Virus record (IMG/VR): IMGVR_UViG_3300020380_000001
Span: 62,001 to 126,000 of that record
Strand: one strand, 5' to 3'
Length of the DNA stretch: 64,000 bases
Position 1 is the stretch's first letter, and each line of letters opens with the position of its first letter. The notes below the pieces were generated by a model. That model searched no databases. It was given only the letters and a program-made list of their open reading frames with translations, and had not been told where the DNA came from. Of this stretch, positions 7,626-55,645 are shown piece after piece. Position numbers and translations under genes: made by a program.

Positions 7626-8323
7626 AAGTAGATTCACTTTACCTGAGTGAAAAAGTAAACTTCGGCAAAAACGTGCCTAAGATTAGACCTGATTCTAATA
7701 TCAGTGATATCAAGGATGCCGTGAGTTACGCATTTAGAAAAATCCATGAGAACAGAAACGACTCAATTACCAAGATCGCAATGAACGGTCTTATTAAAGA
7801 AGCGGGTTCTGTTATATCGAAACAAATTAAGGACGGCCGAATTGGTATGAAAGAGTTAAACGAATTTAGACAGTGGATTGACACAGTCGCAAATAATGAA
7901 ACGCAACTTAACGAAAACGTTGATCAAGCGGAAGTTCTTGTTGCTGCTAAAGCACTAAGCGGCGATATCCAGAACATGTATGAGAAGGTGGCAAAAATGG
8001 TTGCTACTGACTTGATCCATATCACTGAAGAGATTAAGAACAAATTCGGCGAAGACCAAGCCAAAGCGTTTTATAATCTTGCTAAGTCTAATTTAGAAGG
8101 CCTAACCGACACGCTACAGGCTAGCTATGAGGAACTATCAGGGGCAGCTGATGACTTGTCTTCTGGTACGCCTATTAGCTCAGGCGGCGATATGATGGAT
8201 TACGACAGCCTTGAGGGCGACGATAGCGACGATGAAGGCGATGCTCCTGATTTAGATAGCGACGGTACCGATGCTCCTGATTTAGAGCTAGGCGGCGACC
8301 GTGGAATGAAGGACGACGCGTAA
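7622..8323 (+). CDS. helical protein with acidic low-complexity tail, scaffold/core-like
   Basis: ORF track; Asp/Gly-rich tail with a DAPDL duplication. Confidence 0.6.
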   Translation: MKVDSLYLSEKVNFGKNVPKIRPDSNISDIKDAVSYAFRKIHENRNDSITKIAMNGLIKEAGSVISKQIKDGRIGMKELNEFRQWIDTVANNETQLNENVDQAEVLVAAKALSGDIQNMYEKVAKMVATDLIHITEEIKNKFGEDQAKAFYNLAKSNLEGLTDTLQASYEELSGAADDLSSGTPISSGGDMMDYDSLEGDDSDDEGDAPDLDSDGTDAPDLELGGDRGMKDDA

Positions 8324-8643
8324 TGCGCATAGATGAAATTATCAACGAAAGCGACGATAATTTGCGAGCCGAGTTAGAGAATTTCATCTTACGCCAGCGA
8401 GCACAGGGTCAAGAAGAGATTGATACTTCTGTTGCCGTTCAGTATATGCATGACATGACGGGCGTACAAGTTACGCCTGAAATGATTGTTGATATGCTGT
8501 CTGGGTCTGACATAATAGGCACAGCGACGGTTGATACGATTTCGTTTGGATCCGAGCTTGCTATTGACGTAGGTGACGAAGAATCCGCTCGTGATGCGGT
8601 TCGCAAAAAAGCTTCACAATTTGCAAAAAAAGAAATGAGGTAG
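8323..8643 (+). CDS. hypothetical acidic protein
   Basis: ORF track; coupled TAATG overlap. Confidence 0.7.
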   Translation: MRIDEIINESDDNLRAELENFILRQRAQGQEEIDTSVAVQYMHDMTGVQVTPEMIVDMLSGSDIIGTATVDTISFGSELAIDVGDEESARDAVRKKASQFAKKEMR

Positions 8644-8646
8644 TGT

Positions 8647-9735
8647 ATGCGCCTGGGCTTCAGTGCTGACGAGCTTGACAATGTAAAGCCGTATAGTGCG
8701 ATGTTGATGGATGACTTGAATGTTGCTGAGAAGATGATTCTCGATGCGCATCATGCAGGAAACCGTTCGGTAGTAATTGACTCGGGCACGCACCTCACTG
8801 AAACGTCTGGTTTTATTGAATCAGTTAACATCTTAAATGGCGGCAAGAACCTGTCGCCTATCCCCGCTAAAGTACAAATCGAACACTCTGTCGGTTACGG
8901 CGCCAAGTTTAAAGTGAACGTTGATAGCTACGGTGCCATAACTAGTGTGGATGTAGTAGAGCCTGGATCAGGTTATTACCCTGTTTTAGCCAAGGCTTAC
9001 CCGCCGGTCCGTTTTACGGAGAACGAACATACGTCGGCTGAGTTTACTGTAGTCGCTAGCGATACTGGCGCAGTACTAAAGGTGGTGCCTACTAAAGCAG
9101 GAACCGGGTACACTGTTGGTTCTGATATTATTATAGATCACCCAAATGGTTTCGGCGCTTCGGCGCAAATATCCGAGGTTGATTCTCAGGGAGGCATCCT
9201 GAGTGTAAGTGTATCTGCACCCGGTACAGGCTATTCGCCACGCTTACCTAGTATTGTTGTTTCCCACCCAGCAGGCAAAGGATTTGTAGCAGGCGCCATA
9301 CAGACTGAAAATGGTCGCATAAAGTCGATAGCAGTAAAGAGTGGCGGGTCTGGTTACAGTCCTATCCAGTGCCGTGTGCGCATGTCTAGTCGTACAGGAT
9401 CCGGTGCAAAGCTTAAGCCCTTGTTTTCGGCTGCGGGTGAAATTATAGGTGTTACCTTGTTATCAGGTGGCAGCGAGTATTCAGTGCATGATACAATTAC
9501 CGTTACCCCGAGTGAGTTCCATACAAACCCTGTACCAGCTATTTTAGAGCCTGTTGTAAATGTTAGCACGCCAACATCTACACCTTACTGGCAAGCATAC
9601 AGGAGTCCTGTGAAGTCCCAAGAAAGAGACTTTGTTTACAGATTTATAAGTATTTTAGAGGCTGCAAAATTTACTGTTAATGTAGTAACCAATCCGAGAA
9701 CACTCAACACACTAAAAATAACAATAAGTTGGTGA
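8647..9735 (+). CDS. virion structural protein with about five ~38-aa beta repeats ending in GxGY
   Basis: VVEPGSGY, PTKAGTGY, VSAPGTGY, VKSGGSGY, LLSGGSEY; repeat type seen in T4-like baseplate and tail proteins. Confidence 0.6.
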   Translation: MRLGFSADELDNVKPYSAMLMDDLNVAEKMILDAHHAGNRSVVIDSGTHLTETSGFIESVNILNGGKNLSPIPAKVQIEHSVGYGAKFKVNVDSYGAITSVDVVEPGSGYYPVLAKAYPPVRFTENEHTSAEFTVVASDTGAVLKVVPTKAGTGYTVGSDIIIDHPNGFGASAQISEVDSQGGILSVSVSAPGTGYSPRLPSIVVSHPAGKGFVAGAIQTENGRIKSIAVKSGGSGYSPIQCRVRMSSRTGSGAKLKPLFSAAGEIIGVTLLSGGSEYSVHDTITVTPSEFHTNPVPAILEPVVNVSTPTSTPYWQAYRSPVKSQERDFVYRFISILEAAKFTVNVVTNPRTLNTLKITISW

Positions 9736-11430: not shown

Positions 11431-11889
11431 ATGACACATACAGATTGGACTCAACTTGACTTTGAAGATTTTATGGCACTGTGGCGCAAAATGCGTGTTG
11501 ACCTGCCTGTACTAAGCGCTGAAGAATTAGGTTCTCATTTGCGTGAAAAGTTTGCAAGGTTTCCTATCGAGACGGGCAAAACACTAGATCCCTATTCCCC
11601 GTCTAACTGGCCTAGTCCGTGGGAGCAGATTACTGATAGTCTGTTCTGTTCCTGTGGCTTAGGCGTATTTCTTTACTACACAATAAGTCTTTCAGAATCG
11701 TACGCCGACGACGATTTCGGGATTTATTACGTAGAAAAAGAAGGCTATGACAGGATAGTCATCGTAAATAACACACATGGTTGGTTTATAGATACACTGA
11801 CTTATGATGGCGGTACGGTGTCTGACTTGCAAGTAGGAAAAATACTTGCCTCTTACAGTAGTCAAGACCTACCGAGATACAATAACTAG
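11431..11889 (+). CDS. hypothetical protein
   Basis: ORF track; AGGGG RBS before ATG 11431. Confidence 0.7.
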   Translation: MTHTDWTQLDFEDFMALWRKMRVDLPVLSAEELGSHLREKFARFPIETGKTLDPYSPSNWPSPWEQITDSLFCSCGLGVFLYYTISLSESYADDDFGIYYVEKEGYDRIVIVNNTHGWFIDTLTYDGGTVSDLQVGKILASYSSQDLPRYNN

Positions 11890-11899
11890 CGAGACGAAA

Positions 11900-14239
11900 A
11901 TGACAGAAGAGATCCGCATTAAGAAGCGTGACGGTTCACTCGAGCCCTTCAATATCGAGAAAATCCACAAAGTAGTACAATGGGCATGTAACGGCTTAAC
12001 CGGTGTTTCGCCATCACAAATAGAACTTAAATCAAAGCTTTACTTCTACGACGGGATGGAATCGCAAGCGATTCATAAAACGTTAACTAAAACCGCAGCT
12101 GATTTGATCACTCCGGAAGACAGTAACTATCAATACGTTGCGAGTAAGTTGGTGAACTTTAACTTGCGTAAAGAAGTATACGGGCAACCCGAGCCGTGGC
12201 ACTTGCGTAAAATTGTTGAGCGCAATATCACGCTGGGATGGTACACTGAAGAACTTAAAGAGTGGTACAGTGACGAAGAGTTAAATTATCTTAATAAAAT
12301 CATTAAACATGACCGCGACTATGATATTAGTTACGCTGGTATGGGGCAGTGGTTAGGTAAGTATTTGGCACAAGATCGTGTGAAAGAAGAGCACTTTGAA
12401 ACCCCGCAGGTGGCTTATGTGTTGATCGCTGCTACGTTGTTCCATGATTACCCCGCAGACACTCGTATGAAGTTTGTTAAGGACTACTACGATGCATTGA
12501 GTAAATTTAAGATTAGTGTACCGACACCGGTTCTAGCGGGCGCCAGAACACGCGAAAAGCAGTTCAGTTCTTGTGTACTTATTGAGTCAGCGGATAGCTT
12601 GGATTCAATTAACGCAACATCGTCTGCCATTGTAAACTACGTTTCACAGAAAGCGGGCATTGGTATTAACATCGGTCGCATTCGTCCGGTTGGTACTAAA
12701 GTACGAGGCGGCGATGTCGAGCATACTGGCGTTATCCCGTTCCTTAAGTATTTCCAGGCAGCACTTAAGTCTTGTTCGCAAGGCGGGGTACGCGGCGGCT
12801 CTGCTACTGTGTATTATCCATACTTCCATGGCGAAGTAGAAAACCTTCTTGTTGCTAAAAACAACAAAGGGACTGAAGAAAGCCGCGTGCGTCATGTAGA
12901 CTACGGTATTCAGTTTAACAAGCTAATATATGAGCGTGCACTAACCGGTCAAGATGTTACCTTGTTTAACTCAAGTGAAGTGCCGCAGTTATGGGACACG
13001 TTTTACTCGGGCGATAACGATGCATTTGCCAAGCTTTACTGTGAGTTAGAAAAGTCACCTAAAGTTACGTACAAGCGCAAAGTCAACGCGTATGAGTTAA
13101 TGTCGCAGTTTCTAGATGAAAGACAAAACACTGGTCGAATTTACTTGCAGAATATCGATCACTGTAATACTCACAGCTCGTTTGACCAAACCAAACACCC
13201 TGTGACTATGTCTAACTTGTGTGCTGAGATTACGTTGCCTACTAAGCCTTTTGAGTCACTACATGATGAATCAGGCCGTATTGCGCTTTGTACGTTATCG
13301 GCGATTAACTGGGGTGTAATTAATAAGCCCGAAGACTTTGAGAAACCGTGTGACTTAGCTGTTCGCAGCCTTGACGCGCTGTTATCATACCAAAACTATC
13401 CGGCTATCCAGGCTGAGCTTTCTACTAGAGAGTTTAGAACTTTGGGTATAGGTATCAACAACTTAGCATACTTCCTTGCTAAGAACGGTACCGGGTATAC
13501 ACAAGAGTCGGCGCTAGAGTTAGTTGACGAGTATATGGAAGCAATGAGTTTCTACATCATTAAAGCTTCTGTTCAGTTAGCTAAAGAGAAAGGCGCGTGT
13601 GAATTATCGCATGAGACCAAGTACGGACAGGGTTTATTCCCGTGGGAAACTGCGCATAAAAACGTTAATGACTTGGTGCCGTTGAACTTACGCATGGACT
13701 GGGAATCGCTGCGCACTGATATGAAGAAGTACGGTGTTCGTAATGCTGCGATGATGGCATGTATGCCGAGTGAGTCTTCTAGCCAGCTTATTAACGCTAC
13801 TAACGGTGTTGAGCCACCGCGTGGTTTTGTTAGCGAAAAGTCAAGCAAACACGGTGTGTTTAAGCAAGTAGTGCCTGAGTACAACAAGTACAAAAACAAG
13901 TACGAACTGTTATGGGATCAAGAGTCGCCGCGTGGTTACTTGTCTATTATGGCTGTGTTACAGCGCTACATGGATCAGACCATATCCGCTAACACAAGTT
14001 ATAACCCGTTACACTTCAAAACTCTTGATGCTAATGGCGGCGAGATGAAGAGTAAGATTCCACTTACTACGTTGATTGAAGACTTGTACTTCACTTACTC
14101 TCACGGCGTTAAAACGTTGTATTATGCGAACACGTATGATGCAAACGAAGGTGACGGCACTGAGAAGAAAGACGACGTTGAAGAGCCGTTACCGGTTGAG
14201 ATTATCGACGACGATGACTGTGAAGGGTGTGTACTGTAA
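11900..14239 (+). CDS. nrdA: ribonucleotide reductase class Ia alpha subunit
   Basis: N-terminal ATP cone (IKKRDG), FSSCVLI, SNLCAEITLP, LCTLSA, MPSESSS, C-terminal CxxC (CEGC). Confidence 0.97.
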   Translation: MTEEIRIKKRDGSLEPFNIEKIHKVVQWACNGLTGVSPSQIELKSKLYFYDGMESQAIHKTLTKTAADLITPEDSNYQYVASKLVNFNLRKEVYGQPEPWHLRKIVERNITLGWYTEELKEWYSDEELNYLNKIIKHDRDYDISYAGMGQWLGKYLAQDRVKEEHFETPQVAYVLIAATLFHDYPADTRMKFVKDYYDALSKFKISVPTPVLAGARTREKQFSSCVLIESADSLDSINATSSAIVNYVSQKAGIGINIGRIRPVGTKVRGGDVEHTGVIPFLKYFQAALKSCSQGGVRGGSATVYYPYFHGEVENLLVAKNNKGTEESRVRHVDYGIQFNKLIYERALTGQDVTLFNSSEVPQLWDTFYSGDNDAFAKLYCELEKSPKVTYKRKVNAYELMSQFLDERQNTGRIYLQNIDHCNTHSSFDQTKHPVTMSNLCAEITLPTKPFESLHDESGRIALCTLSAINWGVINKPEDFEKPCDLAVRSLDALLSYQNYPAIQAELSTREFRTLGIGINNLAYFLAKNGTGYTQESALELVDEYMEAMSFYIIKASVQLAKEKGACELSHETKYGQGLFPWETAHKNVNDLVPLNLRMDWESLRTDMKKYGVRNAAMMACMPSESSSQLINATNGVEPPRGFVSEKSSKHGVFKQVVPEYNKYKNKYELLWDQESPRGYLSIMAVLQRYMDQTISANTSYNPLHFKTLDANGGEMKSKIPLTTLIEDLYFTYSHGVKTLYYANTYDANEGDGTEKKDDVEEPLPVEIIDDDDCEGCVL

Positions 14240-15129
14240 TGAATATTGAAGCACTATCCAATATGACAGCCAAAGAGTTGGGCAGTGCGGCCAATAAAAA
14301 CATGCAGGAGGAGTTGCTTATGGCAACTCCGTTTTTACCGGAGAGTGCGACTTGGACTCAAAGGAAATGGCATGTAATAAACGAAAGCTATGAAGCGGTG
14401 CTATGTGACGATTGTGACAAGCACGCTAAGTGGTCTGGCCGTGGCTATTCAAAGTACTGCGGCGGTGATGTGTGTAACACACCTAGCGAGCCTATTAGTG
14501 ACATTATTGATAAGGAAGTTAGTGAAAAGATCACCTTGCCTTATTTCGAACAAATTGTCGCATATATGCGTCGTTTAATAGGTGATGAAAACATAGTTAT
14601 AGACGAAAACAAAGTCGGCTATAAGCAAGGCAACTACCGCGGTATATCCGCTAAACCTGCGCTTGGGTACTTACATGTGAGTGAGTACGACTGGGTTAAG
14701 AAGAATTCGCTGTCTATGAGCTTCATAAACAGAGAATACGGGGCTCATAAGGGCCATGTGCATCCTAACTCCATTAAAGTAGTTAACGTGCCTGTCGGTT
14801 TATACAGAAGCTTTTTCAACAAGTATAGTTTTGACGATTCTACTGTTGGTAAGACCTGTATAGGGCTCTATAGTGGCACTGAGCTTATAGCCGCTGTGCT
14901 TTTTGACTACGAAAATGAAGCGCAAGGGAAGTGGCGGATTATAAATAAAGCAATAAAAGTAGACAGACACGTAGATGCCGCAATAACTCGCATCACTGAA
15001 TACTTTAAGGCGACTTTTTTCCCTAAAGAAATTAGTTTAATCCTGAACCCTTACAAAGACAATGTGCAAGCCTGGGAGAACCGCGGGTTTATGCAACATG
15101 AAGATCGATACATTTGGAAGAGTAAATGA
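14239..15129 (+). mobile_element. Hef-like freestanding homing endonuclease remnant between nrdA and nrdB
   Basis: CxxC...C...C zinc module, YLHVSEYDWVKK segment and GNAT-like C-terminal half resemble Hef-family proteins; sits in the nrdA-nrdB interval, a known homing-endonuclease hotspot; nuclease core looks eroded. Confidence 0.5.
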
Positions 15130-16250
15130 AGTCAGTATATAACCTCGACAACGTAAAATCCAACGTGCAGTGCAACACGTTCTTGGATGCAGACAATGAC
15201 GGCGTGACAGTTGCGCGGTACGATAAAATTAGATACAGTACAGTTCAGCGTATGACTGAACAACAAGTGGGCTACTTTTGGCAGCCGGAAGAAGTTGACT
15301 TGAGTAAAGACGTTCGTGACTTTAAAAAGCTCACACCAGCTGAGCAACGTATCTTCACGTATAACTTGCGCAGACAAATCTTGTTAGATTCAATTCAAGG
15401 ACGCTCGCCTAACTTAGTGTTCTTACCGGTTGTTACCTTGCCTGAAGCAGAAACGTTTATCGAGACGTGGAGTTTCTTTGAGTCTATCCATAACAGATCA
15501 TACTCGCACATTATCCGTAACGTGTATTCCGATCCAGGCGAAGTATTTGACGGCATTAACAACATCCAACCAATTGTTGACTGTGCTAAGTCAATTGCCA
15601 AGTACTATGACGTGCTTGATTATAACAATTGTTATGTGCGCGTACATGGCTATGATGATAACCTTAGTCTTTATGAGCACAAGAAGTCACTATGGATGGC
15701 ACTAAATGCAGTAAACGCACTTGAAGGCATTCGTTTTTATGTGTCGTTTGCGTGCTCTTGGGCATTCGCTGAACAGAAGAAAATGGAAGGTAACGCCAAA
15801 GTTATTAAGTTTATTTGCCGTGACGAAAATATCCACTTAATGTTCACCCAGAACGCTATTAAGACACTGCCTAAAGAAGATCCGGACTTTGCAAAAATAC
15901 GTGAAGAAACCCGCGACGAGTGCAATGCGTTGTTTGTGGAAGCCATCGAGCAAGAAAAAGAATGGGCTAAATTCCTGTTTGAAGAAGGCTCAATGATAGG
16001 CTTAACTGAAGGCCTTTTATGTAACTATGTTGAGTGGATTGGCCATAACCGTATGCGTGCTATTCAACTAAACAGTCCGTATTCTCCAGGCCAAGCTAAC
16101 CCGCTACCGTGGACTACGAGCTGGATTGCCGGCAAGACACGCCAGGCAGCACCGCAAGAAACAGAACTTGAATCTTACGTTATTGGTGAGATTGACAAAC
16201 GTGTGCCTGAAAACTTTATGAAAGATTTGGCATCCAAAATAAAACTATAA
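15126..16250 (+). CDS. nrdB: ribonucleotide reductase class Ia beta subunit
   Basis: QILLDSIQ, ESIHNRSY, EGIRFYVSF, RDENIH di-iron ligands. Confidence 0.97.
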   Translation: MKSVYNLDNVKSNVQCNTFLDADNDGVTVARYDKIRYSTVQRMTEQQVGYFWQPEEVDLSKDVRDFKKLTPAEQRIFTYNLRRQILLDSIQGRSPNLVFLPVVTLPEAETFIETWSFFESIHNRSYSHIIRNVYSDPGEVFDGINNIQPIVDCAKSIAKYYDVLDYNNCYVRVHGYDDNLSLYEHKKSLWMALNAVNALEGIRFYVSFACSWAFAEQKKMEGNAKVIKFICRDENIHLMFTQNAIKTLPKEDPDFAKIREETRDECNALFVEAIEQEKEWAKFLFEEGSMIGLTEGLLCNYVEWIGHNRMRAIQLNSPYSPGQANPLPWTTSWIAGKTRQAAPQETELESYVIGEIDKRVPENFMKDLASKIKL

Positions 16251-16814: not shown

Positions 16815-16841
16815 AAAGCGCTCATATAAAGGGCGCTTTTT
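16815..16841 (+). terminator. intrinsic terminator
   Basis: AAAGCGCTC-loop-GGGCGCTTTTT. Confidence 0.75.
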
Positions 16842-16873: not shown

Positions 16874-16902
16874 TAGACTTTTGCGTAATACTAATATAGA
16901 AT
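16874..16902 (+). promoter_or_regulatory. sigma70-type promoter TAGACT-17-TAGAAT
   Basis: A-rich UP element; drives the paralog array. Confidence 0.6.
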
Positions 16903-16933: not shown

Positions 16934-17917
16934 ATGATTAAATTGTCAGAACCGATATTTGTGGCTGACCCTATTATTGATTTAATAGGCGAGGCTGCCC
17001 CGTTGTATACCGTTATAAACTACGAATCAGTTAGTAAAAAATTCCTGACAAAAGGAATGTGGTGGGTGCTTGATACAAGCCTCCAGGACAAACTTTCCCA
17101 AGGCACTGATATCTACCGACAATGGATCGCTTATGTATTAGAAGATATTATCACCGAAGCGACCAGTGTTAGGTACGATATAGTATGTGATGCAGAAGAA
17201 ATAACAGCTATACCGGGCGGCGAGGTTTTCCGTAGCTCTTTCCATTGGCGCAAGGGAGGACCAAACAATAGTGGGTCACGTCCAGAAGCCTTAGCAATCG
17301 GTAAGGTTGCCATACAAGTAGACGATAATAATCACCTGCACAAAACAGATGGGCCTGCGGTCCATGCTAAATTTTTCCATTGTCTGGAAGGAGAGTCTAA
17401 CGTTTTTGACTACGAGTACAGTATGTACATGTTGCACGGCATGCCGCACCGTTTAGACGGGCCTGCGATTGAGGTCAAGATATTTGATCCTCTAACACAG
17501 GAATATATTCTTCATATTGAAGTATGTGCAGTTGCCGGAAAACTACACAACGTAGGTGATGTACCTGCGATTCATATGAATAAAGGTGATTACACACTTA
17601 AGCTGTTCTTTGAAAACGGTACGTTAGTGTCGGGATCCAGAAGTGACGAATACGGTAATGTGACTATAGATACTACCCGGCACGGGTTTGTTGTATCCGA
17701 AGCAAACGTTGACTCTGCTGCCGTAGACGGCGTAGTCCACTTTGATAAGACAGGCGATCTGCATAATCCGGTAGGCCCTGCTGTTATAACTCCTAGAAGC
17801 GCCAGTTATTACCTACATGGCAAAGAAACAACATTTGAAGCAATGTGTTCGTTAGGGCTGGTTACTAAAACTGAAGAAATAATGATTGCGCTATCACACG
17901 GTGAGGTGGTTTCATGA
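16934..17917 (+). CDS. LH(R/N)xxGPA-repeat protein, paralog 1
   Basis: LHKTDGPAV, PHRLDGPAI, LHNVGDVPAI, LHNPVGPAV. Confidence 0.75.
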   Translation: MIKLSEPIFVADPIIDLIGEAAPLYTVINYESVSKKFLTKGMWWVLDTSLQDKLSQGTDIYRQWIAYVLEDIITEATSVRYDIVCDAEEITAIPGGEVFRSSFHWRKGGPNNSGSRPEALAIGKVAIQVDDNNHLHKTDGPAVHAKFFHCLEGESNVFDYEYSMYMLHGMPHRLDGPAIEVKIFDPLTQEYILHIEVCAVAGKLHNVGDVPAIHMNKGDYTLKLFFENGTLVSGSRSDEYGNVTIDTTRHGFVVSEANVDSAAVDGVVHFDKTGDLHNPVGPAVITPRSASYYLHGKETTFEAMCSLGLVTKTEEIMIALSHGEVVS

Positions 17918-18981
17918 GATACGACGAACACGCGCTTGTGACATATACGCCCGCGTTTTACCGGACCGGGATGCCTAACAATATAGATCATCATTTGTTA
18001 GAGATGGGATTGAAAAACGACGGCGCTATCTATATGGAAAGCATTTCGGATCTTATACGTAAGACGAATGATTCTGGTATCGGGAGAAGGATAAAGACAC
18101 TTGCTCTGCACTACCGTGGAGGCCCTGACAACCGCGAGTACTTGAACGATGTGGAGGACTTGGCGCTGACTATTATTGAAGCGCTAAGTGTGCACCCACT
18201 ATTTCTTGGTATGTTTATGCTTAAAGACTCAGATCTTGACGCTGATTGGCTTCAACGTTTCGAGGTCAATAAGGTAGGCGAAGACTTAAACCAAGTCGTT
18301 ATTTATTCTGACTTCAGAGGTTACAAATCCCACTACACTGAGTTCTATTGTACTGATAGAGCTGAGATAGTTACGCCGGAAGACGACAAACCTGCGCTAG
18401 TTATACGCGCTGCTAAAGGTCTGTCGATAGGCACTAATACTCGCTTGTCGATATACCTGAATCGTTTTGGTAAATTACACCGTGATGGTGATCGCCCCGC
18501 GCTAGTATTAAATGATCGTGACGGATACCGAAACTTTATTATATGCGCACGGGATGGCGAGTTACATCGCAACCATGATGAACCTGCGCTTTACGGAACG
18601 TCGAGAGACTTTACCTTGTCAGTTCACGCACGTGACGGCCACATACATAACGAACAGGGTCCTGCCATTGATTATAATGTTAAGAGAGAAGAATCATACA
18701 CCTCTTATATTGTGAACGGCAAGCCTAGAACATCTACCCCGTCGGCTGCGCATGTTTACCTGACAACAAACCTGCTTACTCATTATTACTTAGATGATAA
18801 TTTTGAGATACACAACGAGTACGGTCCTGCTATTAAAAGTAGCAACGCGGGCAAGTCTGTTATGCGGGTGTACGCAAGGCATGGACACAAAATGTCTGGT
18901 AAAGAAGAGTGGCTAATGCGCTCAAAAATGACAGAGGCCGAAAAGGGGCTATACGTGCTAGGAGAAGACCTCGATGATTAA
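17914..18981 (+). CDS. LH(R/N)xxGPA-repeat protein, paralog 2
   Basis: LHRDGDRPAL, LHRNHDEPAL, IHNEQGPAI, IHNEYGPAI; ATGA overlap. Confidence 0.75.
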   Translation: MRYDEHALVTYTPAFYRTGMPNNIDHHLLEMGLKNDGAIYMESISDLIRKTNDSGIGRRIKTLALHYRGGPDNREYLNDVEDLALTIIEALSVHPLFLGMFMLKDSDLDADWLQRFEVNKVGEDLNQVVIYSDFRGYKSHYTEFYCTDRAEIVTPEDDKPALVIRAAKGLSIGTNTRLSIYLNRFGKLHRDGDRPALVLNDRDGYRNFIICARDGELHRNHDEPALYGTSRDFTLSVHARDGHIHNEQGPAIDYNVKREESYTSYIVNGKPRTSTPSAAHVYLTTNLLTHYYLDDNFEIHNEYGPAIKSSNAGKSVMRVYARHGHKMSGKEEWLMRSKMTEAEKGLYVLGEDLDD

Positions 18982-19969
18982 ATTGCCCGACATGCGAAAT
19001 TTAGTGGTTGGCCGCTCCGGCGTGAACCAAGTAGCAGTTGTCCTGACACGTCTTACAGACGCACATACACAAGAACATCGTTACGGGTCGAAGATATTGG
19101 GGTTCGTCAGTGCACTGGCACGCGGCGAAGACCTCGAATCAAGCAGAGTCATAACCGGGTGTTGGCAGGTTTACGAGTCCAAAATAAAGCCGTATTTTGC
19201 TAGTACTATATTCATGAATAGTATTGATATGGACAAATATCAGCCAACTAAGCATTATACAAAAGACGGGGTCGCGTATTGTAAGTTTGAAGACTTGAGC
19301 GAGACCTCAACGACAGCCGTTTATGAGTTGACTGTCACTGCCGAACATGCGACCTCGCACGACTTAATCCGTGTTGACGTAAAAGGCGACATTAAAAACA
19401 AATATGGCGCGAAACACGGCTTTACGCATGCTACTTTTTACATCGATACAACGACTGGGCTCTTAAGTGACTTTGGCGAAACCCCGGCACTGGCTATGCA
19501 TGTGATGCGTAACGTGAATTTAAACATGTATACTAACTGTATCGCGGTCTACGCAAAAAACGGTGTCATAAACGACAACGGTGACCGCCCGGCTTTTACA
19601 ACAAAAGTATATTTTGATAAAGATAGCAAAAAGATAATAGATATTTCGGTGAGCATCGAAGATAGGCAGCTTAGTAAAAAAGGCTTTGAGTCTACGTTTG
19701 TGAGTAGTGGTGATGTTATTGAGACTGCCAGGTGCTCGTATGTAGATGACAAGTTCGGATGGAAAGTGACACTAGATAGTGACCCTAATTACTGGTTACT
19801 GATTGATCACAATATGGATGTGGGGTCTAAATACTATCCGGGGCTCGTAACTGAACAAGACACCCATTATATAATAAAGAATCAGGTGGTAACGCCGTCT
19901 GAGTTCGTAAAACAATGTAACTTAAGTGATGAGGAAAAAGCTATGATAATTTTGGGTGAGACCCAATGA
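18974..19969 (+). CDS. LH(R/N)xxGPA-repeat protein, paralog 3 (degenerate repeats)
   Basis: LSDFGETPAL, INDNGDRPAF; shares the C-terminal LSDEEKAMIILG motif. Confidence 0.7.
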   Translation: MIKLPDMRNLVVGRSGVNQVAVVLTRLTDAHTQEHRYGSKILGFVSALARGEDLESSRVITGCWQVYESKIKPYFASTIFMNSIDMDKYQPTKHYTKDGVAYCKFEDLSETSTTAVYELTVTAEHATSHDLIRVDVKGDIKNKYGAKHGFTHATFYIDTTTGLLSDFGETPALAMHVMRNVNLNMYTNCIAVYAKNGVINDNGDRPAFTTKVYFDKDSKKIIDISVSIEDRQLSKKGFESTFVSSGDVIETARCSYVDDKFGWKVTLDSDPNYWLLIDHNMDVGSKYYPGLVTEQDTHYIIKNQVVTPSEFVKQCNLSDEEKAMIILGETQ

Positions 19970-21057
19970 AGGGTATCTTAGCGTCAGTATTTGAAATACC
20001 CGCATCTATCCGTGACACCTCTACGGTACCGGATGTGCTGCCCGTGTTAAAGACCGTACTCGACATTTCTGGTAAAAACAACGCATCGCATGCAGTGCAT
20101 ATATCTGCTTTCGATGAAGTGGCCGAAACACTTGTACCCGATGGCACTTATAGCGTAAATGAGGTTGTTTTTGCAGCAAAGGAAAACGCACTAAGACTTT
20201 TCGTATCGACAACCAATAGACTATATTCCAATGCGGCAGACAGAAAACGTCCTGCCGTCGAAGACCTCGAGGTAGAAATAGACCATAAAAACGAATCAGT
20301 GGAGATATCCATCAAGTGTTTTCACATTAAAGTCAATATCTTTTTGTCGTTTTATGAAAGGGCAGATGGGCTAATGCTACACTCTGATTCAGGCCCTGCA
20401 TTCGTAATATCCACAAAATCCACTGAACATCCATATGAGAACACCGATATAAAAATATACGCAGAATATGGATTATTACACAGAACTGGTGATCTGCCTG
20501 CTCTTACGAGTAGCTATTGTGTTGGTATATTAGGGAATCGGTTCCATCAGAAATGCTACGCCGAGAATGGTCTAGTAGGAAGAAACAATACCGCGCCTGC
20601 TTTGATCGTTGAGAAGTACAGGATAAGAGAAGGATTTGAAGACGAGTTATCTTCCAAAACCCGTTTATACGCAAAGAACGGCAAACTTGCACTAAGTTCG
20701 CAAGACTATTACATGGTTCACGAATCGTTTAGGCTGGATAAACCAGCGCTATTAGAGATGACGGTTGATGAAACTGGACACCCAGTTTTACACACGTACT
20801 GGCCAAAAAACGGTAAGCTAGTGAGATCCAACTCGCGCTATTTAGATGACAGCCTATCATATTTACACCGCGTCGACGGTCCGGCGGCAGTGTTTGCCTA
20901 TACCGGAGGAAGAACCGGTTTTGAGTATTGGTATCGCGGCGTGGCATGCTCTATAGACCAATATTTGCGTATGAACAATGAACTTACAGACAGTGAAAAA
21001 GCAATAATCAGGCTTGGACACGAAAAGACAAACTGCGTGAGATACGTAGATAAATAA
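19966..21057 (+). CDS. LH(R/N)xxGPA-repeat protein, paralog 4
   Basis: LHSDSGPAF, LHRTGDLPAL, LHRVDGPAA; C-terminal LTDSEKAIIRLG. Confidence 0.75.
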   Translation: MKGILASVFEIPASIRDTSTVPDVLPVLKTVLDISGKNNASHAVHISAFDEVAETLVPDGTYSVNEVVFAAKENALRLFVSTTNRLYSNAADRKRPAVEDLEVEIDHKNESVEISIKCFHIKVNIFLSFYERADGLMLHSDSGPAFVISTKSTEHPYENTDIKIYAEYGLLHRTGDLPALTSSYCVGILGNRFHQKCYAENGLVGRNNTAPALIVEKYRIREGFEDELSSKTRLYAKNGKLALSSQDYYMVHESFRLDKPALLEMTVDETGHPVLHTYWPKNGKLVRSNSRYLDDSLSYLHRVDGPAAVFAYTGGRTGFEYWYRGVACSIDQYLRMNNELTDSEKAIIRLGHEKTNCVRYVDK

Positions 21058-22727: not shown

Positions 22728-22756
22728 TTGATTAATTCTTTAAAGTTTGTTAGTAT
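22728..22756 (+). promoter_or_regulatory. sigma70-type promoter TTGATT-17-TAGTAT
   Basis: Upstream of rIIA. Confidence 0.5.
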
Positions 22757-22790
22757 TGAATTATATTTTAACCAAGCTTTAAGGTATGTA

Positions 22791-25598
22791 ATGAAAGTCA
22801 CAACTAAAGGGAAAGAAACACGGACTTCGAGCGGAGTTGCCTCGACAGGTTTCACTATAAAATCTAACGCGCACGCTTTTAAGATATTATCAAGCAACAT
22901 GTATTCAAACCCACGACACGCTATTATCCGTGAGTTGTCTACTAACGCACTTGACGCACACGCGATGAATGGCAACACCGACAAGCCGTTTGATGTGACC
23001 CTCCCGACTCAGTTTAATCCGGTATTCGTGTTACGGGATTACGGCCCGGGATTGGATATGGACAATGCAACTAATCTCTATACCACATATTTCGACAGCA
23101 CTAAAAACGACAACAACGAAGCCGTAGGCGGCCTTGGTCTTGGATCCAAATCACCGCTTGGTTATACAGACATTTTTAATGTTGTGTCTTACCACGAAGG
23201 CAAGGCGCACCATTTTGCCGTAATTATTAATGAAGAAGGCCTCCCGTCTATCAACCATTTGGGCAGCTCGGACACTGACGAACCGTCAGGTCTTGAAGTT
23301 TCTGTTCCGATGAAAAACAACGAATCTTCTGAACGTTGCCATTGGCTAGCAGAAGCCATTGACATTTATATGTGGTTCCCTGAAGGTTCTGTTAATATTG
23401 TTAACCCGTCAGCGTACGATGACCGTCTTATTGATGAAGATATAGCTAGTATCGTCCAGGCAGGCAAAGCAGCGCTAGAAGAAGCCGCTGACTACGATAT
23501 AGTGTCGTATTCTACTAACATATACTTCAATGAAGGTAACGGTAGGCTGAATTATCACACCTCCAAAGTACGGATACGTAGCTCAGGCCTTTACGCTCAA
23601 ATGGGACCTATAATTTACCCAGTAAGTATGGACCGTTTGGTGCTTCCGAACAACATGACTTTAAACGCGCCTGACTCCGCAGTAGTAATGAAGTTTGGTA
23701 TAGGTGAACTTACGATTGCACCTTCCCGTGAAGAACTCCACTATGACGACGAAACAGTCTCTGCCTTAAGTAAACGTGTATGGCAAGCAGTTAACAACAC
23801 AATCACAAGTATCACAGATGCAGTTGAAGAAATACAAACCATTGAACAAGTAATTGAAATGGCTAAGTCTGGACTGGAACTTGATGTACCCGGCGGTACA
23901 TATGCAGCTCGTATGGCAAGTATGGATTTTCGTTCGCTATTAAGTGATCGTGTTCAGAAAATCGTTGACGCTCAGTATAATCCTATACTATCTGTATCGA
24001 CACTTTCTTTGGAGTCTGCGCGAGTAGCGCATAAGAAGAACAGGTACAGTATTAACCTTAGCATGTCAATACCTGACTTGTTTGTGACACATGGTACTAT
24101 ACCTGCAGAAGATGTAGCTGAGGTCAAACAAGCGCTTTGTCGTGCACGTATGATGAAAGCCGATAAGACATTTGACGTTGTCTATACAGAAGTAGTACAC
24201 CGACACATACTGGACAAAGTTTACGAAAATTATTTGGAATCTGACCAAGCCGACGAAGTAGTTGAAGCGGTTGCTGAACTGCTAGGTCTTGACCCTAGCG
24301 ATGAATACTTTGACGAGACAGATCTGCCGTTGGGTAGTCTACGCCCGCGACATTTAAAGGGTTTGGTGGATGACGGTTTCGAAAACTTCAGTACTGCTTA
24401 TGCTTTTGAATATGATTTCGGCAAGTCGTGGACTCGTACTTGGACAAGTAGCAAATTTTTCAAAGGCAGTGTGGAGATTTTGGTTGAAGACAAGCCCGGT
24501 CATGTGAATGCTTGGCGCCAATACGTTAAGGAAGAACGCGCTTACTACTGCAACATGAGTATCCTTGCAAACGAAAAAGACGCTAAGCTAATCAAAGCGT
24601 TCCTTGATGCGGTTGGCTTAGAAGTATCACATTACGGCAACGTAAGTGAGTTTAAGCCTGTAGCTTATATTAAGGAAATCAACAAGCGCGATACGTCTGC
24701 TATGAATATTGGTGTCCGCCGAGTGCGCAAGGACGGCTCGCTAATTGATTCATATTTAGAAAACTGGGATATTGTTAGCGTACATTCCGATAATACGTTG
24801 TACGTGAGTATAGAGGCAGGCACACTGGGATCACCGTATTCTCTTGAGACAATGGAAGCGTGTAGCAAGTATTCTGATCAAGTCAAAGAGCTAGTTAACA
24901 AGGCATATACGCTGCCGTCAGGTGACCCGGTTTCTAATATATTGTTTTATACAGCAAGCCAAAGGAACGTGAAGGCCATTGCCAACCTTGAAAATTGTTT
25001 GTCTATTCCGGTAAAAGACTTCCGTGATAAAATATCTGAAATGGCAGTATTGGATCACAAAGACTACATCGATTCTATTAAAGGTGTATCGTCTGGCGAA
25101 TTAGCTGGTAATATGCCGAGCTTTATAATGGAAACTATAGAGTTCATAACGGATTTTTGTCCTGAACTTAGATTTAAGATAGATGACGATTTCACTAGTA
25201 AATACGTCAACAAGGTCTTAACAATTACGTCAGCCACTACGAGCAACACTTACAAGTTCTTAGAGGCAGTAATTGGTAAACAAGACTTCCATGCTATTAT
25301 TGAAGACGAGTCTTCAAAAGAAAGTAAAATGTTGCGGGACGCCAAGTTCTGTGGTAAAATCGCTAACGTTTTCGCGACACCGGTACTGTATTCATTCGTG
25401 CGCGGCTTGAGACTTGCGAATAATAACGCTTATTCGTCTACGGGCATTTATGACTGTAGTGCGTGCGAACTAAAGCAATATAATGGCCAGGAGCGCACGG
25501 TAAACATACCGGAAGTTTCTATCAAAGAAGCGCTAAGACAAGCACGGAATATAATACGAGATCAGGTAATAACTGATACTAACACAGGAGAGGAATAA
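22791..25598 (+). CDS. rIIA: rIIA-like protein (lysis-inhibition/Rex-exclusion protector)
   Basis: GHKL-type N-domain (IIRELSTNALDA, DYGPGL, GGLGLGSKS, SREELHYD); directly upstream of rIIB; start moved to ATG 22791. Confidence 0.9.
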   Translation: MKVTTKGKETRTSSGVASTGFTIKSNAHAFKILSSNMYSNPRHAIIRELSTNALDAHAMNGNTDKPFDVTLPTQFNPVFVLRDYGPGLDMDNATNLYTTYFDSTKNDNNEAVGGLGLGSKSPLGYTDIFNVVSYHEGKAHHFAVIINEEGLPSINHLGSSDTDEPSGLEVSVPMKNNESSERCHWLAEAIDIYMWFPEGSVNIVNPSAYDDRLIDEDIASIVQAGKAALEEAADYDIVSYSTNIYFNEGNGRLNYHTSKVRIRSSGLYAQMGPIIYPVSMDRLVLPNNMTLNAPDSAVVMKFGIGELTIAPSREELHYDDETVSALSKRVWQAVNNTITSITDAVEEIQTIEQVIEMAKSGLELDVPGGTYAARMASMDFRSLLSDRVQKIVDAQYNPILSVSTLSLESARVAHKKNRYSINLSMSIPDLFVTHGTIPAEDVAEVKQALCRARMMKADKTFDVVYTEVVHRHILDKVYENYLESDQADEVVEAVAELLGLDPSDEYFDETDLPLGSLRPRHLKGLVDDGFENFSTAYAFEYDFGKSWTRTWTSSKFFKGSVEILVEDKPGHVNAWRQYVKEERAYYCNMSILANEKDAKLIKAFLDAVGLEVSHYGNVSEFKPVAYIKEINKRDTSAMNIGVRRVRKDGSLIDSYLENWDIVSVHSDNTLYVSIEAGTLGSPYSLETMEACSKYSDQVKELVNKAYTLPSGDPVSNILFYTASQRNVKAIANLENCLSIPVKDFRDKISEMAVLDHKDYIDSIKGVSSGELAGNMPSFIMETIEFITDFCPELRFKIDDDFTSKYVNKVLTITSATTSNTYKFLEAVIGKQDFHAIIEDESSKESKMLRDAKFCGKIANVFATPVLYSFVRGLRLANNNAYSSTGIYDCSACELKQYNGQERTVNIPEVSIKEALRQARNIIRDQVITDTNTGEE

Positions 25599-26938
25599 TG
25601 ATATCGTATATCATACGTGAAGATAGTGTTGTCGTTTTCGTAGACGGCAAACAACACATCGTTTCACAGAGTAATCACCCGCGATTTGCTGGTATTGTAG
25701 ATGCCATTGATCGTGAAGATCACGAGTATATTCGAGAGAATATAAACGTTAAGGACGCAATAACTCGTGAAATCACCGGCGCTTGTGAAGGTCGTGTAGA
25801 AGTAACCGACTCACAAGTATTGTTTAACGGGGCAGTTGTTACCAACTCAATCGGTAAGCGTATCCTTAAATGTATCGAACAAAAGCTACCGTTCAGACCT
25901 CTGATGCGCTTCCTGGACAATATCATGGAAAACCCGTCTCGTACGGCAGTTGAAGAACTGTTCTTGTTTTTAGAACATAACGACTTGCCAATTACAGACG
26001 ACGGTCACTTGCTTGCGTACAAAAGCGTAACGGAAAACTTCAAGGACCGTCACACCGGTACTATTGACAATTCGCCCGGACAAGTAGTGGAAATGCCGCG
26101 TGAAGAAGTTGATAGCGAACGTGAAAGAACATGTTCATCCGGTTTGCACTTTTGCGCGTTGCACTACTTGAGCACGGCATACGGCTATGGTGGCCAAGTT
26201 GTTATCCTTAAAATTAACCCACGTGACGTGGTAAGTATTCCGTCGGATTACAATAACTCTAAGGGCCGCTGCTGTCGTTACGAAGTGTTATGCAAACAAA
26301 ACAAGCCTGGCGACGATATTCTAGCTCAAGGCCCAGCAGTAGTTGAGACCGAAGCGGTTAAAGATATCGTGAACAAGACTTCTACTGAAGTATATAACAC
26401 TGACGGTAGCGAGTTTGTTCCTGAAGAACGCGGATCAACTGTACACTTTGAAAAACCGGTTGAAGAAGTACCGGAAGAAGTAGTTGAAGAAAAGCCGGCT
26501 GAAACTGTTACCGGGTATAGTGTTCCTGGCGAATTACAGGTACCGACTGTTACTGATGAAACCCATCCGTTTGTTGGTAAAAACTTAGCGCTATTCAGTG
26601 TATCTGGTACGTTCTATAACGGTCGTCGTTACGTTGAAGCTAAGCTTCCTATCTACGTTGCATTAGAAGATGGCATGAGTTTAGACGATGCTGCTGAAAC
26701 TCTAATAGAGTGTGAAGAAGCTGTTCGCTACCGTGTCTCTAACTTCCGTGTAGGCGCTAAGCAGACATTACTAGTTAGACGCGGTGATGGTCCTGATTCT
26801 CTTAATGTTGAGATTCAAAGCACCGGAAAGGTTAAGCTTAATAAACACGTTTCGTTTAATGGCGTATGTGTTGAAAGTACCGAAAACGGTAAAACTTTGA
26901 TTGGTCTTAACGTCGGAAGCCCTGGCCGCTTACAATAA
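25598..26938 (+). CDS. rIIB: rIIB-like protein with a C-terminal extension
   Basis: LPITDDGHLLAYK, CSSGLHFC, DVVSIPSDYNNSKGRCCRY. Confidence 0.92.
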   Translation: MISYIIREDSVVVFVDGKQHIVSQSNHPRFAGIVDAIDREDHEYIRENINVKDAITREITGACEGRVEVTDSQVLFNGAVVTNSIGKRILKCIEQKLPFRPLMRFLDNIMENPSRTAVEELFLFLEHNDLPITDDGHLLAYKSVTENFKDRHTGTIDNSPGQVVEMPREEVDSERERTCSSGLHFCALHYLSTAYGYGGQVVILKINPRDVVSIPSDYNNSKGRCCRYEVLCKQNKPGDDILAQGPAVVETEAVKDIVNKTSTEVYNTDGSEFVPEERGSTVHFEKPVEEVPEEVVEEKPAETVTGYSVPGELQVPTVTDETHPFVGKNLALFSVSGTFYNGRRYVEAKLPIYVALEDGMSLDDAAETLIECEEAVRYRVSNFRVGAKQTLLVRRGDGPDSLNVEIQSTGKVKLNKHVSFNGVCVESTENGKTLIGLNVGSPGRLQ

Positions 26939-26997: not shown

Positions 26998-27879
26998 ATG
27001 GATACTTTTGACACACAGTATTACGAGCTTCTTCTCCATTTGGTGAATGTAGCTGAAGAAAAACCTTCATCCCGTCCGGGCATGAAAACAAAGTCGACAT
27101 TCGGGCATTCCATGTCAGTTGACTTGAGTGAATCCTTCCCATTGACCACATTGCGCAAGACTCCACTTAGATGGATATTTGAAGAAACAATGATGTTCGT
27201 GCGCGGTGAATCACAAACGAAAGTCCTAGAAGAAACCGGTATTACTATTTGGAAAGGTAATTCAAGCCGCGAATTCTTAGATAACAAAGGTCATACTGAT
27301 TGGCCGGAAGGTGAAATCGGGCCTGGTTCCTATGGTGCCCTGTGGCGTGCGTTCCCCGGTAAGGACGGCAAGACTGTCGATCAACTTAAACAGCTTGTAG
27401 ACGGGCTAAAGAATAACCCATACGACCGCAGACACTTAATTAGTGCATGGCATCCGCAGTACTCGGTGGATTTTGCTGCGCTACCCGCTTGCCACATATT
27501 ACAGCAATATGATGTAACGCCTAGCGGCAAGCTAAACAGCAACTTTTACATGAGATCCAACGATGTGTTATTCGGGCTACCGTTTAATATGGCGCAGTAC
27601 GCGTTCATGAATATCTGTATTGCTAAACTCGTTGGACTTGAACCCGGCAAACTCACTTACATGTGTGGTGATTCGCACATTTACGAAAACCAGTATGCTG
27701 CGTCTGAATACCTACTGTTACAGACAGAGCAAATGGATATTCCGCCACCGCCGAAACTAGAAATTACAAAAGAGCTAAACACATTAGATGACTTTGTAAA
27801 TCTCAAGTACACAGACTTGCAGCTAACAGGCTATAACCCTAATCCGGATATACCGGACAAACCAAAGATGGCTGTTTAA
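26998..27879 (+). CDS. thyA: thymidylate synthase
   Basis: LTTLRK, PYDRRHLISAW, ALPACH, RSNDVLFGLPFN, DSHIYENQ. Confidence 0.95.
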   Translation: MDTFDTQYYELLLHLVNVAEEKPSSRPGMKTKSTFGHSMSVDLSESFPLTTLRKTPLRWIFEETMMFVRGESQTKVLEETGITIWKGNSSREFLDNKGHTDWPEGEIGPGSYGALWRAFPGKDGKTVDQLKQLVDGLKNNPYDRRHLISAWHPQYSVDFAALPACHILQQYDVTPSGKLNSNFYMRSNDVLFGLPFNMAQYAFMNICIAKLVGLEPGKLTYMCGDSHIYENQYAASEYLLLQTEQMDIPPPPKLEITKELNTLDDFVNLKYTDLQLTGYNPNPDIPDKPKMAV

Positions 27880-37159: not shown

Positions 37160-37171
37160 TAGGACATTATA

Positions 37172-40213: not shown

Positions 40214-40215
40214 CT

Positions 40216-55636: not shown

Positions 55637-55645
55637 GCGGGTTAA
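54917..55645 (+). CDS. modular virion-surface protein 3: shared N-terminal module plus Lcl/DUF1566-like domain
   Basis: MPIKFTGPVKPKKLKSPDPINMP; DFRTGLEW...FEGFRIANEAE; C-terminal NNPNSPYN. Confidence 0.65.
   Translation: MPIKFTGPVKPKKLKSPDPINMPVVRDNKAPRVKQDVEYFKVHGTMPTVAPPLGPPEGQTIGAADIAQAGDNKAFIDFRTGLEWVRLSRTNAFTDATIQAELQAGGQFEGFRIANEAETDSLLRTITPNYFNPVHVYSVDTHYIVPEQWNNWNSIMGITGNKYGRNWSYGIYDTGSGYKHGGTDYFAESNRLPNRLMKFNKDDALDFDFMGIFLVSDGGNTLLSQEFPHYMANNPNSPYNAG

What the first reader, a model, noticed from the sequence alone, without database searches (positions are those of the whole stretch)
16934..21057. Tandem array of four diverged paralogs with LH(R/N)xxGPA repeats and a shared C-terminal tag
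Seen: four 327-363 aa ORFs with overlapping stop and start codons behind one sigma70-type promoter. The N-terminal halves look unrelated. The C-terminal halves carry 2-4 LH(R/N)x2-3(G/D)xPA repeats. All end in a common helix: LVTKTEEIMIALSHG, MTEAEKGLYVLG, LSDEEKAMIILG, LTDSEKAIIRLG. Inference: an early-expressed, diversified family. The repeat scaffold and tail may dock to one partner while the variable N-domains target different host proteins, as expected for anti-defence or host-takeover effectors.
Basis: partly seen in the sequence, partly recalled or inferred. Interest (0 to 1): 0.6.

Follow-up and report, generated by a model that had tools for sequence, protein, structure and literature searches.

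The report
Four diverged MORN-like repeat genes
A marine jumbo phage carries four back-to-back, fast-evolving genes for proteins that share a very degenerate MORN-like beta-hairpin repeat domain and a short helical end but have unrelated front parts; they are probably protein-binding accessory factors made before the late genes, and their targets are unknown.

Summary
Four ORFs (327, 355, 331 and 363 aa) sit at the stated coordinates, with stop and start codons overlapping by 4, 8 and 4 nt. They lie in a 306.5 kb T4-like marine jumbo phage, between nrdB and rIIA. Each protein has three parts:
- an orphan N-terminal stretch of about 100 aa;
- 3-6 degenerate xGxLHRx(G)DxPA repeats;
- a C-terminal two-helix end carrying L(T/S)xxEKxxxxLG.

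That motif occurs nowhere else in the genome. A sister phage keeps the same four genes (75-90% aa identity, dN/dS about 0.2).

No curated family model hits them. A profile search links the repeat half to more than 700 protein clusters carrying WYxNGxLHRDGDxPA repeats. Those found in virus collections come from phages and giant viruses. Some of these relatives hit Pfam MORN_2 or DUF6745. An AlphaFold model shows a single-layer beta-sheet that resembles OspA and MORN proteins.

The "tag" is not special to this array. Its first part ends repeat blocks across the whole family, and its second helix recurs in a subset, including another phage's tandem array.

No late-promoter motif lies upstream, so non-late expression is likely. 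The sigma70-like promoter is weak (9 of 12). An effector or anti-defence role is plausible but untested. This is a divergent variant of a known viral repeat family, of moderate interest.

The parts
16815..16841 (+). Terminator-like hairpin after the 55-aa ORF; marks the likely start of a new transcription unit
   Evidence: 11-bp stem, -14.2 kcal/mol, z -3.7, followed by a U-rich run. Identical in L005 and L006.
16874..16902 (+). Candidate sigma70-like promoter TAGACT-17-TAGAAT
   Evidence: 9 of 12 match, 31 nt before the ATG. Statistically weak: the 9/12 class is seen 35 times against 26 expected. Only matches of 10/12 or better are enriched in this genome.
16934..17917 (+). Gene 1, 327 aa (P0001)
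   Evidence: ORF. Ortholog 89.9% aa identical, dN/dS 0.20.
17336..17782 (+). Gene 1 repeat region (residues about 135-283; LHKTDGPA, PHRLDGPA, LHNVGDVPA, LHNPVGPA)
   Evidence: Motif scan.
17804..17902 (+). Gene 1 C-terminal end module (YYLHG...FEAM...VTKTEEIMIALSHG)
17914..18981 (+). Gene 2, 355 aa (P0002)
   Evidence: ORF. Ortholog 82.6% identical, dN/dS 0.17. AF2 model m08299f1b449d.
18373..18831 (+). Gene 2 repeat region (residues about 154-306; DDKPA, LHRDGDRPA, LHRNHDEPA, IHNEQGPA, IHNEYGPA). Modelled beta-strands already start at residue 113.
18868..18963 (+). Gene 2 C-terminal end module (helices 330-336 and 341-348; MTEAEKGLYVLG)
   Evidence: pLDDT 80-85. Motif.
18974..19969 (+). Gene 3, 331 aa (P0003), the most degenerate copy
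   Evidence: ORF. Ortholog 75.3% identical, dN/dS 0.18.
19463..19843 (+). Gene 3 repeat region (LSDFGETPA, INDNGDRPA, VGSKYYPG)
   Evidence: Aligns with the repeats of P0093.
19862..19957 (+). Gene 3 C-terminal end module (LSDEEKAMIILG)
19966..21057 (+). Gene 4, 363 aa (P0004); three alleles seen in near-identical phages
   Evidence: ORF. dN/dS 0.18-0.23. L005 and L006 differ only in this gene.
20377..20886 (+). Gene 4 repeat region (LHSDSGPA, LHRTGDLPA, VGRNNTAPA, RLDKPA, LHRVDGPA)
20923..21018 (+). Gene 4 C-terminal end module (LTDSEKAIIRLG), followed by 12 extra residues

Best explanation
The four genes are an old tandem duplication of one gene for a viral MORN_2-like beta-hairpin repeat protein, now diverged almost beyond sequence recognition.

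Each product is a soluble, mildly acidic cytoplasmic protein with three parts:
- an orphan N-terminal region of about 100 aa, probably helical;
- an elongated single-layer beta-sheet built from 3-6 degenerate xGxLHRxGDxPA hairpins;
- a two-helix C-terminal end that closes the repeat block.

The genes are probably co-transcribed before the late genes and are translationally coupled. By analogy with MORN and MORN_2 proteins, I infer that the sheet and its end form a protein-binding scaffold. I also infer that each paralog binds a different partner in the infected cell, most likely host proteins, acting as an adaptor or inhibitor.

Shown: gene structure, paralogy, purifying selection with fast divergence, family link, fold class, and absence of the late motif.

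Inferred: binding function, target diversity and timing.

Confidence is about 0.85 for the structural and evolutionary classification and about 0.4 for the binder or effector function; the figure given is for the statement as a whole.
For: Gene structure and coupling.

Orthologous array with the same gene lengths, dN/dS about 0.2, and dN 5-100 times that of neighbours.

Local allele replacement of gene 4.

Family link: the profile search finds 730 clusters at E<=1e-3. Only 5 have E<=1e-30 (orthologs and fragments of them); together with one weaker fragment (P0043) these are the only full-length-type matches, and all others match only profile positions of about 125-350. Eight relatives hit MORN_2 (best 4.5e-8) and eight hit DUF6745.

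Fold: the AF2 model has pLDDT 75-90 over residues 110-260 and 62-85 over 300-350. Structural matches are OspA at Z 8.6, and axonemal MORN proteins, TbMORN1, MORN4 and junctophilin-2 at Z 5.9-6.8. BFVD gives 17 hits at E<=1e-3, including giant-virus MORN repeat proteins and uncultured phages. The Atlas neighbours are viral clusters and a YwqK/MORN_2 cluster.

Precedent: MORN repeats are protein-protein interaction and dimerisation modules (PMC7725318).

Relatives in other viral contigs: they sit in phage-like runs of small same-strand ORFs, once next to a Lar restriction-alleviation gene, and in tandem arrays.

Timing: no CTAAATA late motif lies upstream, while about 30 other genes have it.
Against: - No partner, no expression data and no phenotype are available.
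- None of the four proteins hits MORN, MORN_2 or any anti-defence or defence model directly.
- The MORN-type structural Z-scores (about 6) are below the level the tool calls clear.
- The N-terminal third of the model is unreliable (pLDDT under 50).
- The promoter call is weak.
- Translational coupling would also suit subunits of one complex.
Confidence: 0.55

Rival explanations
1. The four proteins are subunits of one hetero-oligomeric assembly. They would join through their shared repeat and tail halves, as MORN1 proteins dimerise through their C-termini, and would be made in fixed ratios by translational coupling.
For: Overlapping stop and start codons, with SD sequences inside the preceding tails. 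C-terminal antiparallel dimerisation of MORN1 proteins (PMC7725318). Conserved gene order and lengths in the sister phage.
Against: There is no positive evidence. Short relatives also occur as single genes. Gene 4 can be swapped alone between phages, which is easier for an independent module than for an obligate subunit.
Confidence: 0.15
2. They are immunity or antitoxin-like inhibitors in the manner of YwqK-family MORN_2 proteins. Each would neutralise a different host toxin or abortive-infection effector by direct binding. This is a specific form of the anti-defence idea.
For: Atlas structural neighbour: the YwqK-family antitoxin/MORN_2 cluster, TM 0.45. MORN_2 hits in relatives. Position near rIIA/rIIB. 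Fast divergence and allele exchange. One relative sits next to Lar.
Against: No direct MORN_2 or NCBIfam YwqK hit for any of the four. No toxin gene lies nearby. TM 0.45 is weak. The orphan N-domains have no counterpart in YwqK.
Confidence: 0.15
3. They are virion-associated or ejected proteins, such as decoration, internal or injected proteins.
For: Some fold hits are to phage tail-spike beta structures, at Z 4.8-5.8. Repeat proteins often decorate virions.
Against: No late-type CTAAATA motif is present, whereas large structural-size genes have it. The neighbours are nucleotide-metabolism and rII genes. There are no PHROG structural hits.
Confidence: 0.08
4. They are decaying or non-functional ORFs, and the motifs are chance or composition effects.
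For: Extreme divergence between the paralogs. No family hits.
Against: dN/dS 0.17-0.23 in both halves of all four genes. Lengths are conserved in the sister phage and there are no frame disruptions. Motif counts are far above shuffles.
Confidence: 0.02

Closest known systems
Viral WYxNGxLHR(D/E)GDxPA repeat proteins (unnamed; partly covered by Pfam MORN_2 PF07661 and DUF6745 PF20530), in uncultured phages, Agrobacterium phage Atu_ph07, Celeribacter phage P12053L and giant viruses
   Same: Same repeat signature (H-R/N-x-G/D-x-P-A), the same block terminator (Y/W-x-x-G...EEF/W) and, in a subset, the same LS/TxEEKxxxxL helix. They are often in tandem arrays.
   Different: Here the repeats are few, irregularly spaced and degenerate. 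Each protein carries a lineage-specific N-terminal region with no relatives. No curated model recognises the four proteins.
MORN-repeat multigene families of giant viruses (for example tandem duplications in pandoraviruses, PMC5995976)
   Same: Tandemly duplicated, rapidly diverging repeat proteins in the variable part of a large viral genome. Function unknown; presumed protein-protein interaction.
   Different: Those match the MORN models and number tens of copies. This is a four-gene array in a tailed phage, with orphan N-domains.
Eukaryotic MORN proteins (TbMORN1 6t4r, MORN4 6jle, junctophilin-2 7rxe, radial-spoke MORN proteins)
   Same: Fold class: beta-hairpin repeats forming an elongated single-layer antiparallel sheet (Z 5.9-6.8). 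Used for partner binding and C-terminal dimerisation (PMC7725318).
   Different: No sequence-level match to Pfam MORN. Different repeat consensus. No evidence here for dimerisation or membrane junction roles.
YwqK-family antitoxin / MORN_2 proteins of bacteria
   Same: Repeat variant closest in sequence to the relatives of this family. Structural neighbour in the ESM Atlas.
   Different: No direct hit, no adjacent toxin, and extra N-terminal regions.
OspA single-layer beta-sheet
   Same: Best structural match, Z 8.5-8.6 over 126-127 residues.
   Different: Fold geometry only. There is no sequence or functional relation, and OspA is a lipoprotein.

Membership tests
MORN repeat (Pfam PF02493) | Sequence match to the 23-aa YxGxWxxGxxHGxG repeat model | tested here: not met
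   No MORN hit at E<=1 for any of the four proteins.
MORN repeat (Pfam PF02493) | Beta-hairpin repeats forming an elongated single-layer antiparallel beta-sheet | tested here: inconclusive
   The AF2 model shows hairpins over residues 113-319. Matches to TbMORN1, MORN4, junctophilin-2 and radial-spoke MORN proteins have Z 5.9-6.8, below the tool's clear-match level. Foldseek pdb gave no E<1e-3.
MORN_2 / YwqK family (Pfam PF07661) | Sequence match to the MORN_2 model | tested here: inconclusive
   No direct hit. There is a transitive link: 8 of the 44 aligned sequences (all outside relatives) hit MORN_2, best 4.5e-8. The Atlas YwqK cluster has TM 0.45.
MORN_2 / YwqK family (Pfam PF07661) | Pairing with an adjacent toxin gene | tested here: not met
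   The neighbours are nrdB, small orphan ORFs and rIIA/rIIB; no toxin family was found.
Viral LHRxGDxPA repeat family (unnamed; partly DUF6745) | Several H-(R/N)-x-(G/D)-x-P-A hairpin units, significant in a profile search | tested here: met
   730 clusters at E<=1e-3. All hits other than orthologs and their fragments map to the repeat region, in several stretches each. Motif counts. BFVD gave 17 hits at E<=1e-3.
Viral LHRxGDxPA repeat family (unnamed; partly DUF6745) | Repeat block closed by Y/W-x-x-G-x-x-x-(S/T)-x-x-E-(F/W/Y) and a helix | tested here: met
   Present in all four proteins and in many relatives. The second helix L(S/T)xxE(K)xxxxL is present only in a subset: P0086, P0093, P0129, P0152 and the L010 array.
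Known defence or anti-defence protein families | Match to a curated model | tested here: not met
   PADLOC, PHROGs, Pfam and NCBIfam gave no hit. No dedicated anti-defence library was available.

The most novel reading that the evidence does not exclude
The array is a modular effector battery. A conserved MORN_2-like sheet with its LTxxEK helix would anchor every paralog to one common hub, a host or phage machine. The four orphan N-domains would each disable a different host protein, for example a defence effector. Single-gene allele swapping, as seen for gene 4, would be the trace of an arms race. If so, the wider and largely uncharacterised viral LHRDGDxPA repeat family would be a general scaffold for phage and giant-virus host-interaction factors.
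Probability: 0.2. Interest if true: 0.65.

Novelty: new variant of a known kind. Interest (0 to 1): 0.38.

Why it matters
Hundreds of phage and giant-virus protein clusters share this LHRDGDxPA repeat, often in tandem arrays. As far as the libraries and papers searched here show, none has a known function. This array gives a compact, conserved test case with four diverged copies, orphan N-domains, a sister-phage ortholog set and an allele-swapping member. It could be used to find what the scaffold binds. On present evidence it is a divergent member of a recognised type of viral repeat family, not a new mechanism.

Tried and rejected
- **Single-sequence AF2 of P0002:** useless, pLDDT 32.
- **Complex prediction on the C-halves of P0002 and P0004:** no verdict, score 0.00. 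This is not evidence either way.
- **tblastn of all four proteins against 50,697 phage records:** no match. megablast of the locus: none.
- **PDB sequence searches with the profile and with P0007:** nothing meaningful.
- **Foldseek against PDB:** no E<1e-3.
- **Word-based protein searches:** only orthologs plus two repeat proteins. An N-domain-only search of P0004 found only fragments of its own orthologs.
- **Atlas feature searches:** scores under 0.85, so leads only.
- **Weak NTF2-like matches for residues about 74-168 of the model (Z 4.6-5.2):** not used.
- **N-domain homology P0001/P0003 (z 4.0, out of register) and P0003/P0093 (z 3.2):** judged unproven.
- **Alignment of 84 full-length hits:** failed.
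- **Literature searches for the motif strings and for DUF6745:** nothing found.
Full report
**Setting.** The window is bases 62001-126000 of a 306.5 kb virus record with direct terminal repeats, rated complete. It is a T4-like jumbo phage known only from marine metagenomes. Near-identical or 80-90% identical contigs of about 312 kb come from TARA and ENA assemblies. One source labels a homolog as a Sphingobium MAG, which is most likely a binning error. Around the finding lie these genes:
- nrdA (11846-14239);
- an ORF with a homing/HNH-endonuclease-like part (14227-15129);
- nrdB (15126-16250);
- two small ORFs;
- the four-gene array;
- four small ORFs;
- rIIA (22728-25598), rIIB (25598-26938) and thymidylate synthase (26998-27879).

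**The observation.** Stop and start codons overlap by 4, 8 and 4 nt. A Shine-Dalgarno-like run sits within the last codons of each upstream gene, so translational coupling is likely.

Pairwise BLASTP detects only weak similarity, restricted to the C halves (E 2e-6 to 1e-3). Gene 1 against gene 3 reaches only E 0.19-0.36, so gene 3 is linked through genes 2 and 4. Gene 3 is the most eroded. In the whole genome these motifs are concentrated in the four genes. The tail pattern [LM][TS]xxE[KE]xxxxL[GS] occurs in genes 2-4 only, against 0.12 expected by chance; gene 1 has a looser version. A profile of the four finds no fifth copy in the genome.

The N-terminal parts show no detectable similarity by hhalign (probability under 1%). 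By shuffle tests only P0001 vs P0003 is borderline (z 4.0), and that alignment is out of register.

**They are real genes.** The sister phage contigs L005 and L006 carry the same four genes in the same order and with identical lengths. Amino-acid identity is 90, 83, 75 and 88%. dN/dS is 0.17-0.20 in all four genes, in N and C halves alike. Neighbouring genes give 0.00-0.13. dN is 0.05-0.14, against 0.001-0.03 for neighbours, so the array is the fastest-evolving stretch of the locus. L005 and L006 are essentially identical over 13 kb except in gene 4, where nucleotide identity drops to 82-92%. This points to replacement of that one gene by another allele. The alleles still show dN/dS of about 0.2 and keep the repeat and tail motifs.

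**What the shared half is.** Pfam, NCBIfam, PHROGs and PADLOC give nothing for the four proteins. All-length HMMER profile search of 1.84 billion cluster representatives found 730 clusters at E<=1e-3. Only five had E<=1e-30, all orthologs or fragments of them. One further weak hit (P0043) is also an ortholog fragment. Every other hit matches only profile positions of about 125-350, usually in several stretches. These relatives carry a crisp repeat, W-Y-x-N-G-x-L-H-R-D/E-G-D-x-P-A. Among the aligned relatives, 8 hit Pfam MORN_2 (best 4.5e-8) and 8 hit DUF6745.

With an alignment of these relatives, AlphaFold2 models P0002 with pLDDT 75-90 over residues 110-260 and 62-85 over 300-350. The model shows a run of beta-hairpins (113-319) followed by two short helices (330-336 and 341-348). 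The first 110 residues are helical but unreliable.

Structure searches give the following:
- OspA single-layer sheets at Z 8.5-8.6.
- A consistent series of MORN-type proteins at Z 5.9-6.8: axonemal and radial-spoke MORN proteins, TbMORN1, MORN4 and junctophilin-2. The CPAP G-box also appears.
- In BFVD, 17 matches at E<=1e-3. These include giant-virus proteins, some annotated as MORN repeat proteins, as well as uncultured phages and Agrobacterium phage Atu_ph07.
- In the ESM Atlas, viral clusters, a YwqK/MORN_2 cluster and a DUF6745 cluster.

I therefore file the shared half as a very degenerate member of a MORN_2-like hairpin repeat family that the virus libraries show in phages and giant viruses. 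Membership of Pfam MORN or MORN_2 proper was not met by direct test.

**The tail.** Its first part, a strand and helix of the form Y/W-x-x-G-x-x-x-(S/T)-x-x-E-(F/W/Y), ends repeat blocks throughout the family. In long proteins it occurs several times. The second helix, L(S/T)xxE(K)xxxxL(G), is rarer but recurs at the C-terminus of unrelated phage proteins P0086, P0093, P0129 and P0152. A strict pattern finds it in 10 of 157 proteins, against 0.28 in shuffles; 7 of those 10 are this lineage's own proteins.

Contig L010 holds at least four overlapping tandem genes of 95-134 aa that consist of repeats plus this tail only. A 715 kb viral contig (L015) holds eight tandem paralogs of 341-397 aa with the same repeat but a different C-terminal domain.

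But it is a family feature, most simply read as the end-cap of the repeat module. The terminal G-E codons also serve as the ribosome-binding site of the next gene.

**Timing.** An 11-bp hairpin (-14.2 kcal/mol, z -3.7) with a U-rich run follows the preceding ORF. After it comes TAGACT-17-TAGAAT, 31 nt before the first ATG. In this genome, sigma70-like sites of 10/12 or better are enriched in intergenic regions (23 observed, about 5 expected). The 9/12 class, to which this site belongs, is not enriched.

The motif (A/G)CTAAATA is 13.8-fold enriched upstream of genes. It sits 27-60 nt before about 30 starts, including very large genes. From my own knowledge it resembles T4-type late promoters. 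It is absent upstream of the array and of its neighbours from nrdA to thymidylate synthase. Non-late expression is therefore likely but not shown. The intergenic identity with L005 is not informative, because the flanking ORF also has dS of 0. No terminator follows gene 4, so the transcription unit probably continues downstream. Read-level expression evidence could not be obtained.

**Function.** MORN repeats are protein-protein interaction and dimerisation modules rather than membrane binders (PMC7725318). NCBI annotates YwqK-type MORN_2 proteins as antitoxins. Giant viruses expand MORN proteins by tandem duplication in their variable genome halves (PMC5995976).

The four proteins are soluble and mildly acidic, with no convincing membrane segment. 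Relatives sit in phage-like runs of small same-strand ORFs, once beside a Lar restriction-alleviation gene.

Together with fast divergence and allele exchange, this favours intracellular binder or adaptor proteins that act on different partners. A hetero-oligomer of the four is a live alternative, and the one complex prediction gave no verdict. The N-terminal regions remain orphans.

**Verdict.** The array is a strongly diverged, lineage-specific variant of a known kind: tandemly duplicated MORN-like repeat proteins of large viruses. Confidence in that classification is about 0.85. Confidence in the binder or effector function is about 0.4.

Noticed in passing
window 39086-41646: Adjacent genes for a bifunctional NMN adenylyltransferase/Nudix protein (phrog_395, 4e-65) and nicotinamide phosphoribosyltransferase (phrog_448, 8e-122). 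This is a phage NAD+ salvage pair. From my own knowledge, pairs of this kind are reported to counter NAD-depleting defence.
   Followed up: no
window 14227-15129: A 300-aa ORF wedged between nrdA and nrdB, overlapping both. Its C-part is homing/HNH-endonuclease-like (phrog_3339, 1e-6). The sister phage has a 296-aa version.
   Followed up: partly
whole genome (G000); in the window upstream of 4790, 6384 and 27989: The motif (A/G)CTAAATA lies 27-60 nt upstream of about 30 genes and is 13.8-fold enriched in upstream regions. It is probably the late promoter of this T4-like phage.
   Followed up: partly
L005 and L006, positions 8000-9250 (orthologs of window 19966-21057): Two contigs of about 312 kb are about 100% identical over 13 kb except in gene 4 of the array (82-92% nt identity). 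This is a single-gene allele replacement.
   Followed up: yes
window 17890-17917, 18950-18981, 19945-19969: The Shine-Dalgarno sequences of genes 2-4 are encoded by the G-E codons that end the preceding tail motif. Genes 1 and 3 start with the same 12 nt, ATGATTAAATTG (MIKL).
   Followed up: partly
L010 6001-7398: An unrelated 14 kb phage-like contig carries at least 4 overlapping tandem genes (134, 112, 134 and >=95 aa), each made only of LHRDNDxPA repeats plus the ...HEWLxLTxLSEEQKxYLVL tail.
   Followed up: yes
L015 2657-12557: A 715 kb viral contig that also encodes HSP70 carries eight tandem paralogs of 341-397 aa. They have canonical HRDGDKPA repeats and a different conserved C-terminal domain.
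   Followed up: partly
window 52960-55645 and 33881-39066: Other paralog sets. Three tandem genes at 52960-55645 have two more copies at genome 216092-218385. In a run of nine ORFs of about 185 aa, at least 36602-37159 and 37172-37732 are paralogs. None has a PHROG hit.
   Followed up: no
window 8647-9735 and 29772-30812: ORFs with weak matches to baseplate-wedge, virion structural or tail-fibre PHROGs lie inside the otherwise metabolic or early-looking arm.
   Followed up: no
L011 1865-2215: A short repeat+tail relative (P0129) lies directly upstream of a Lar restriction-alleviation homolog.
   Followed up: no
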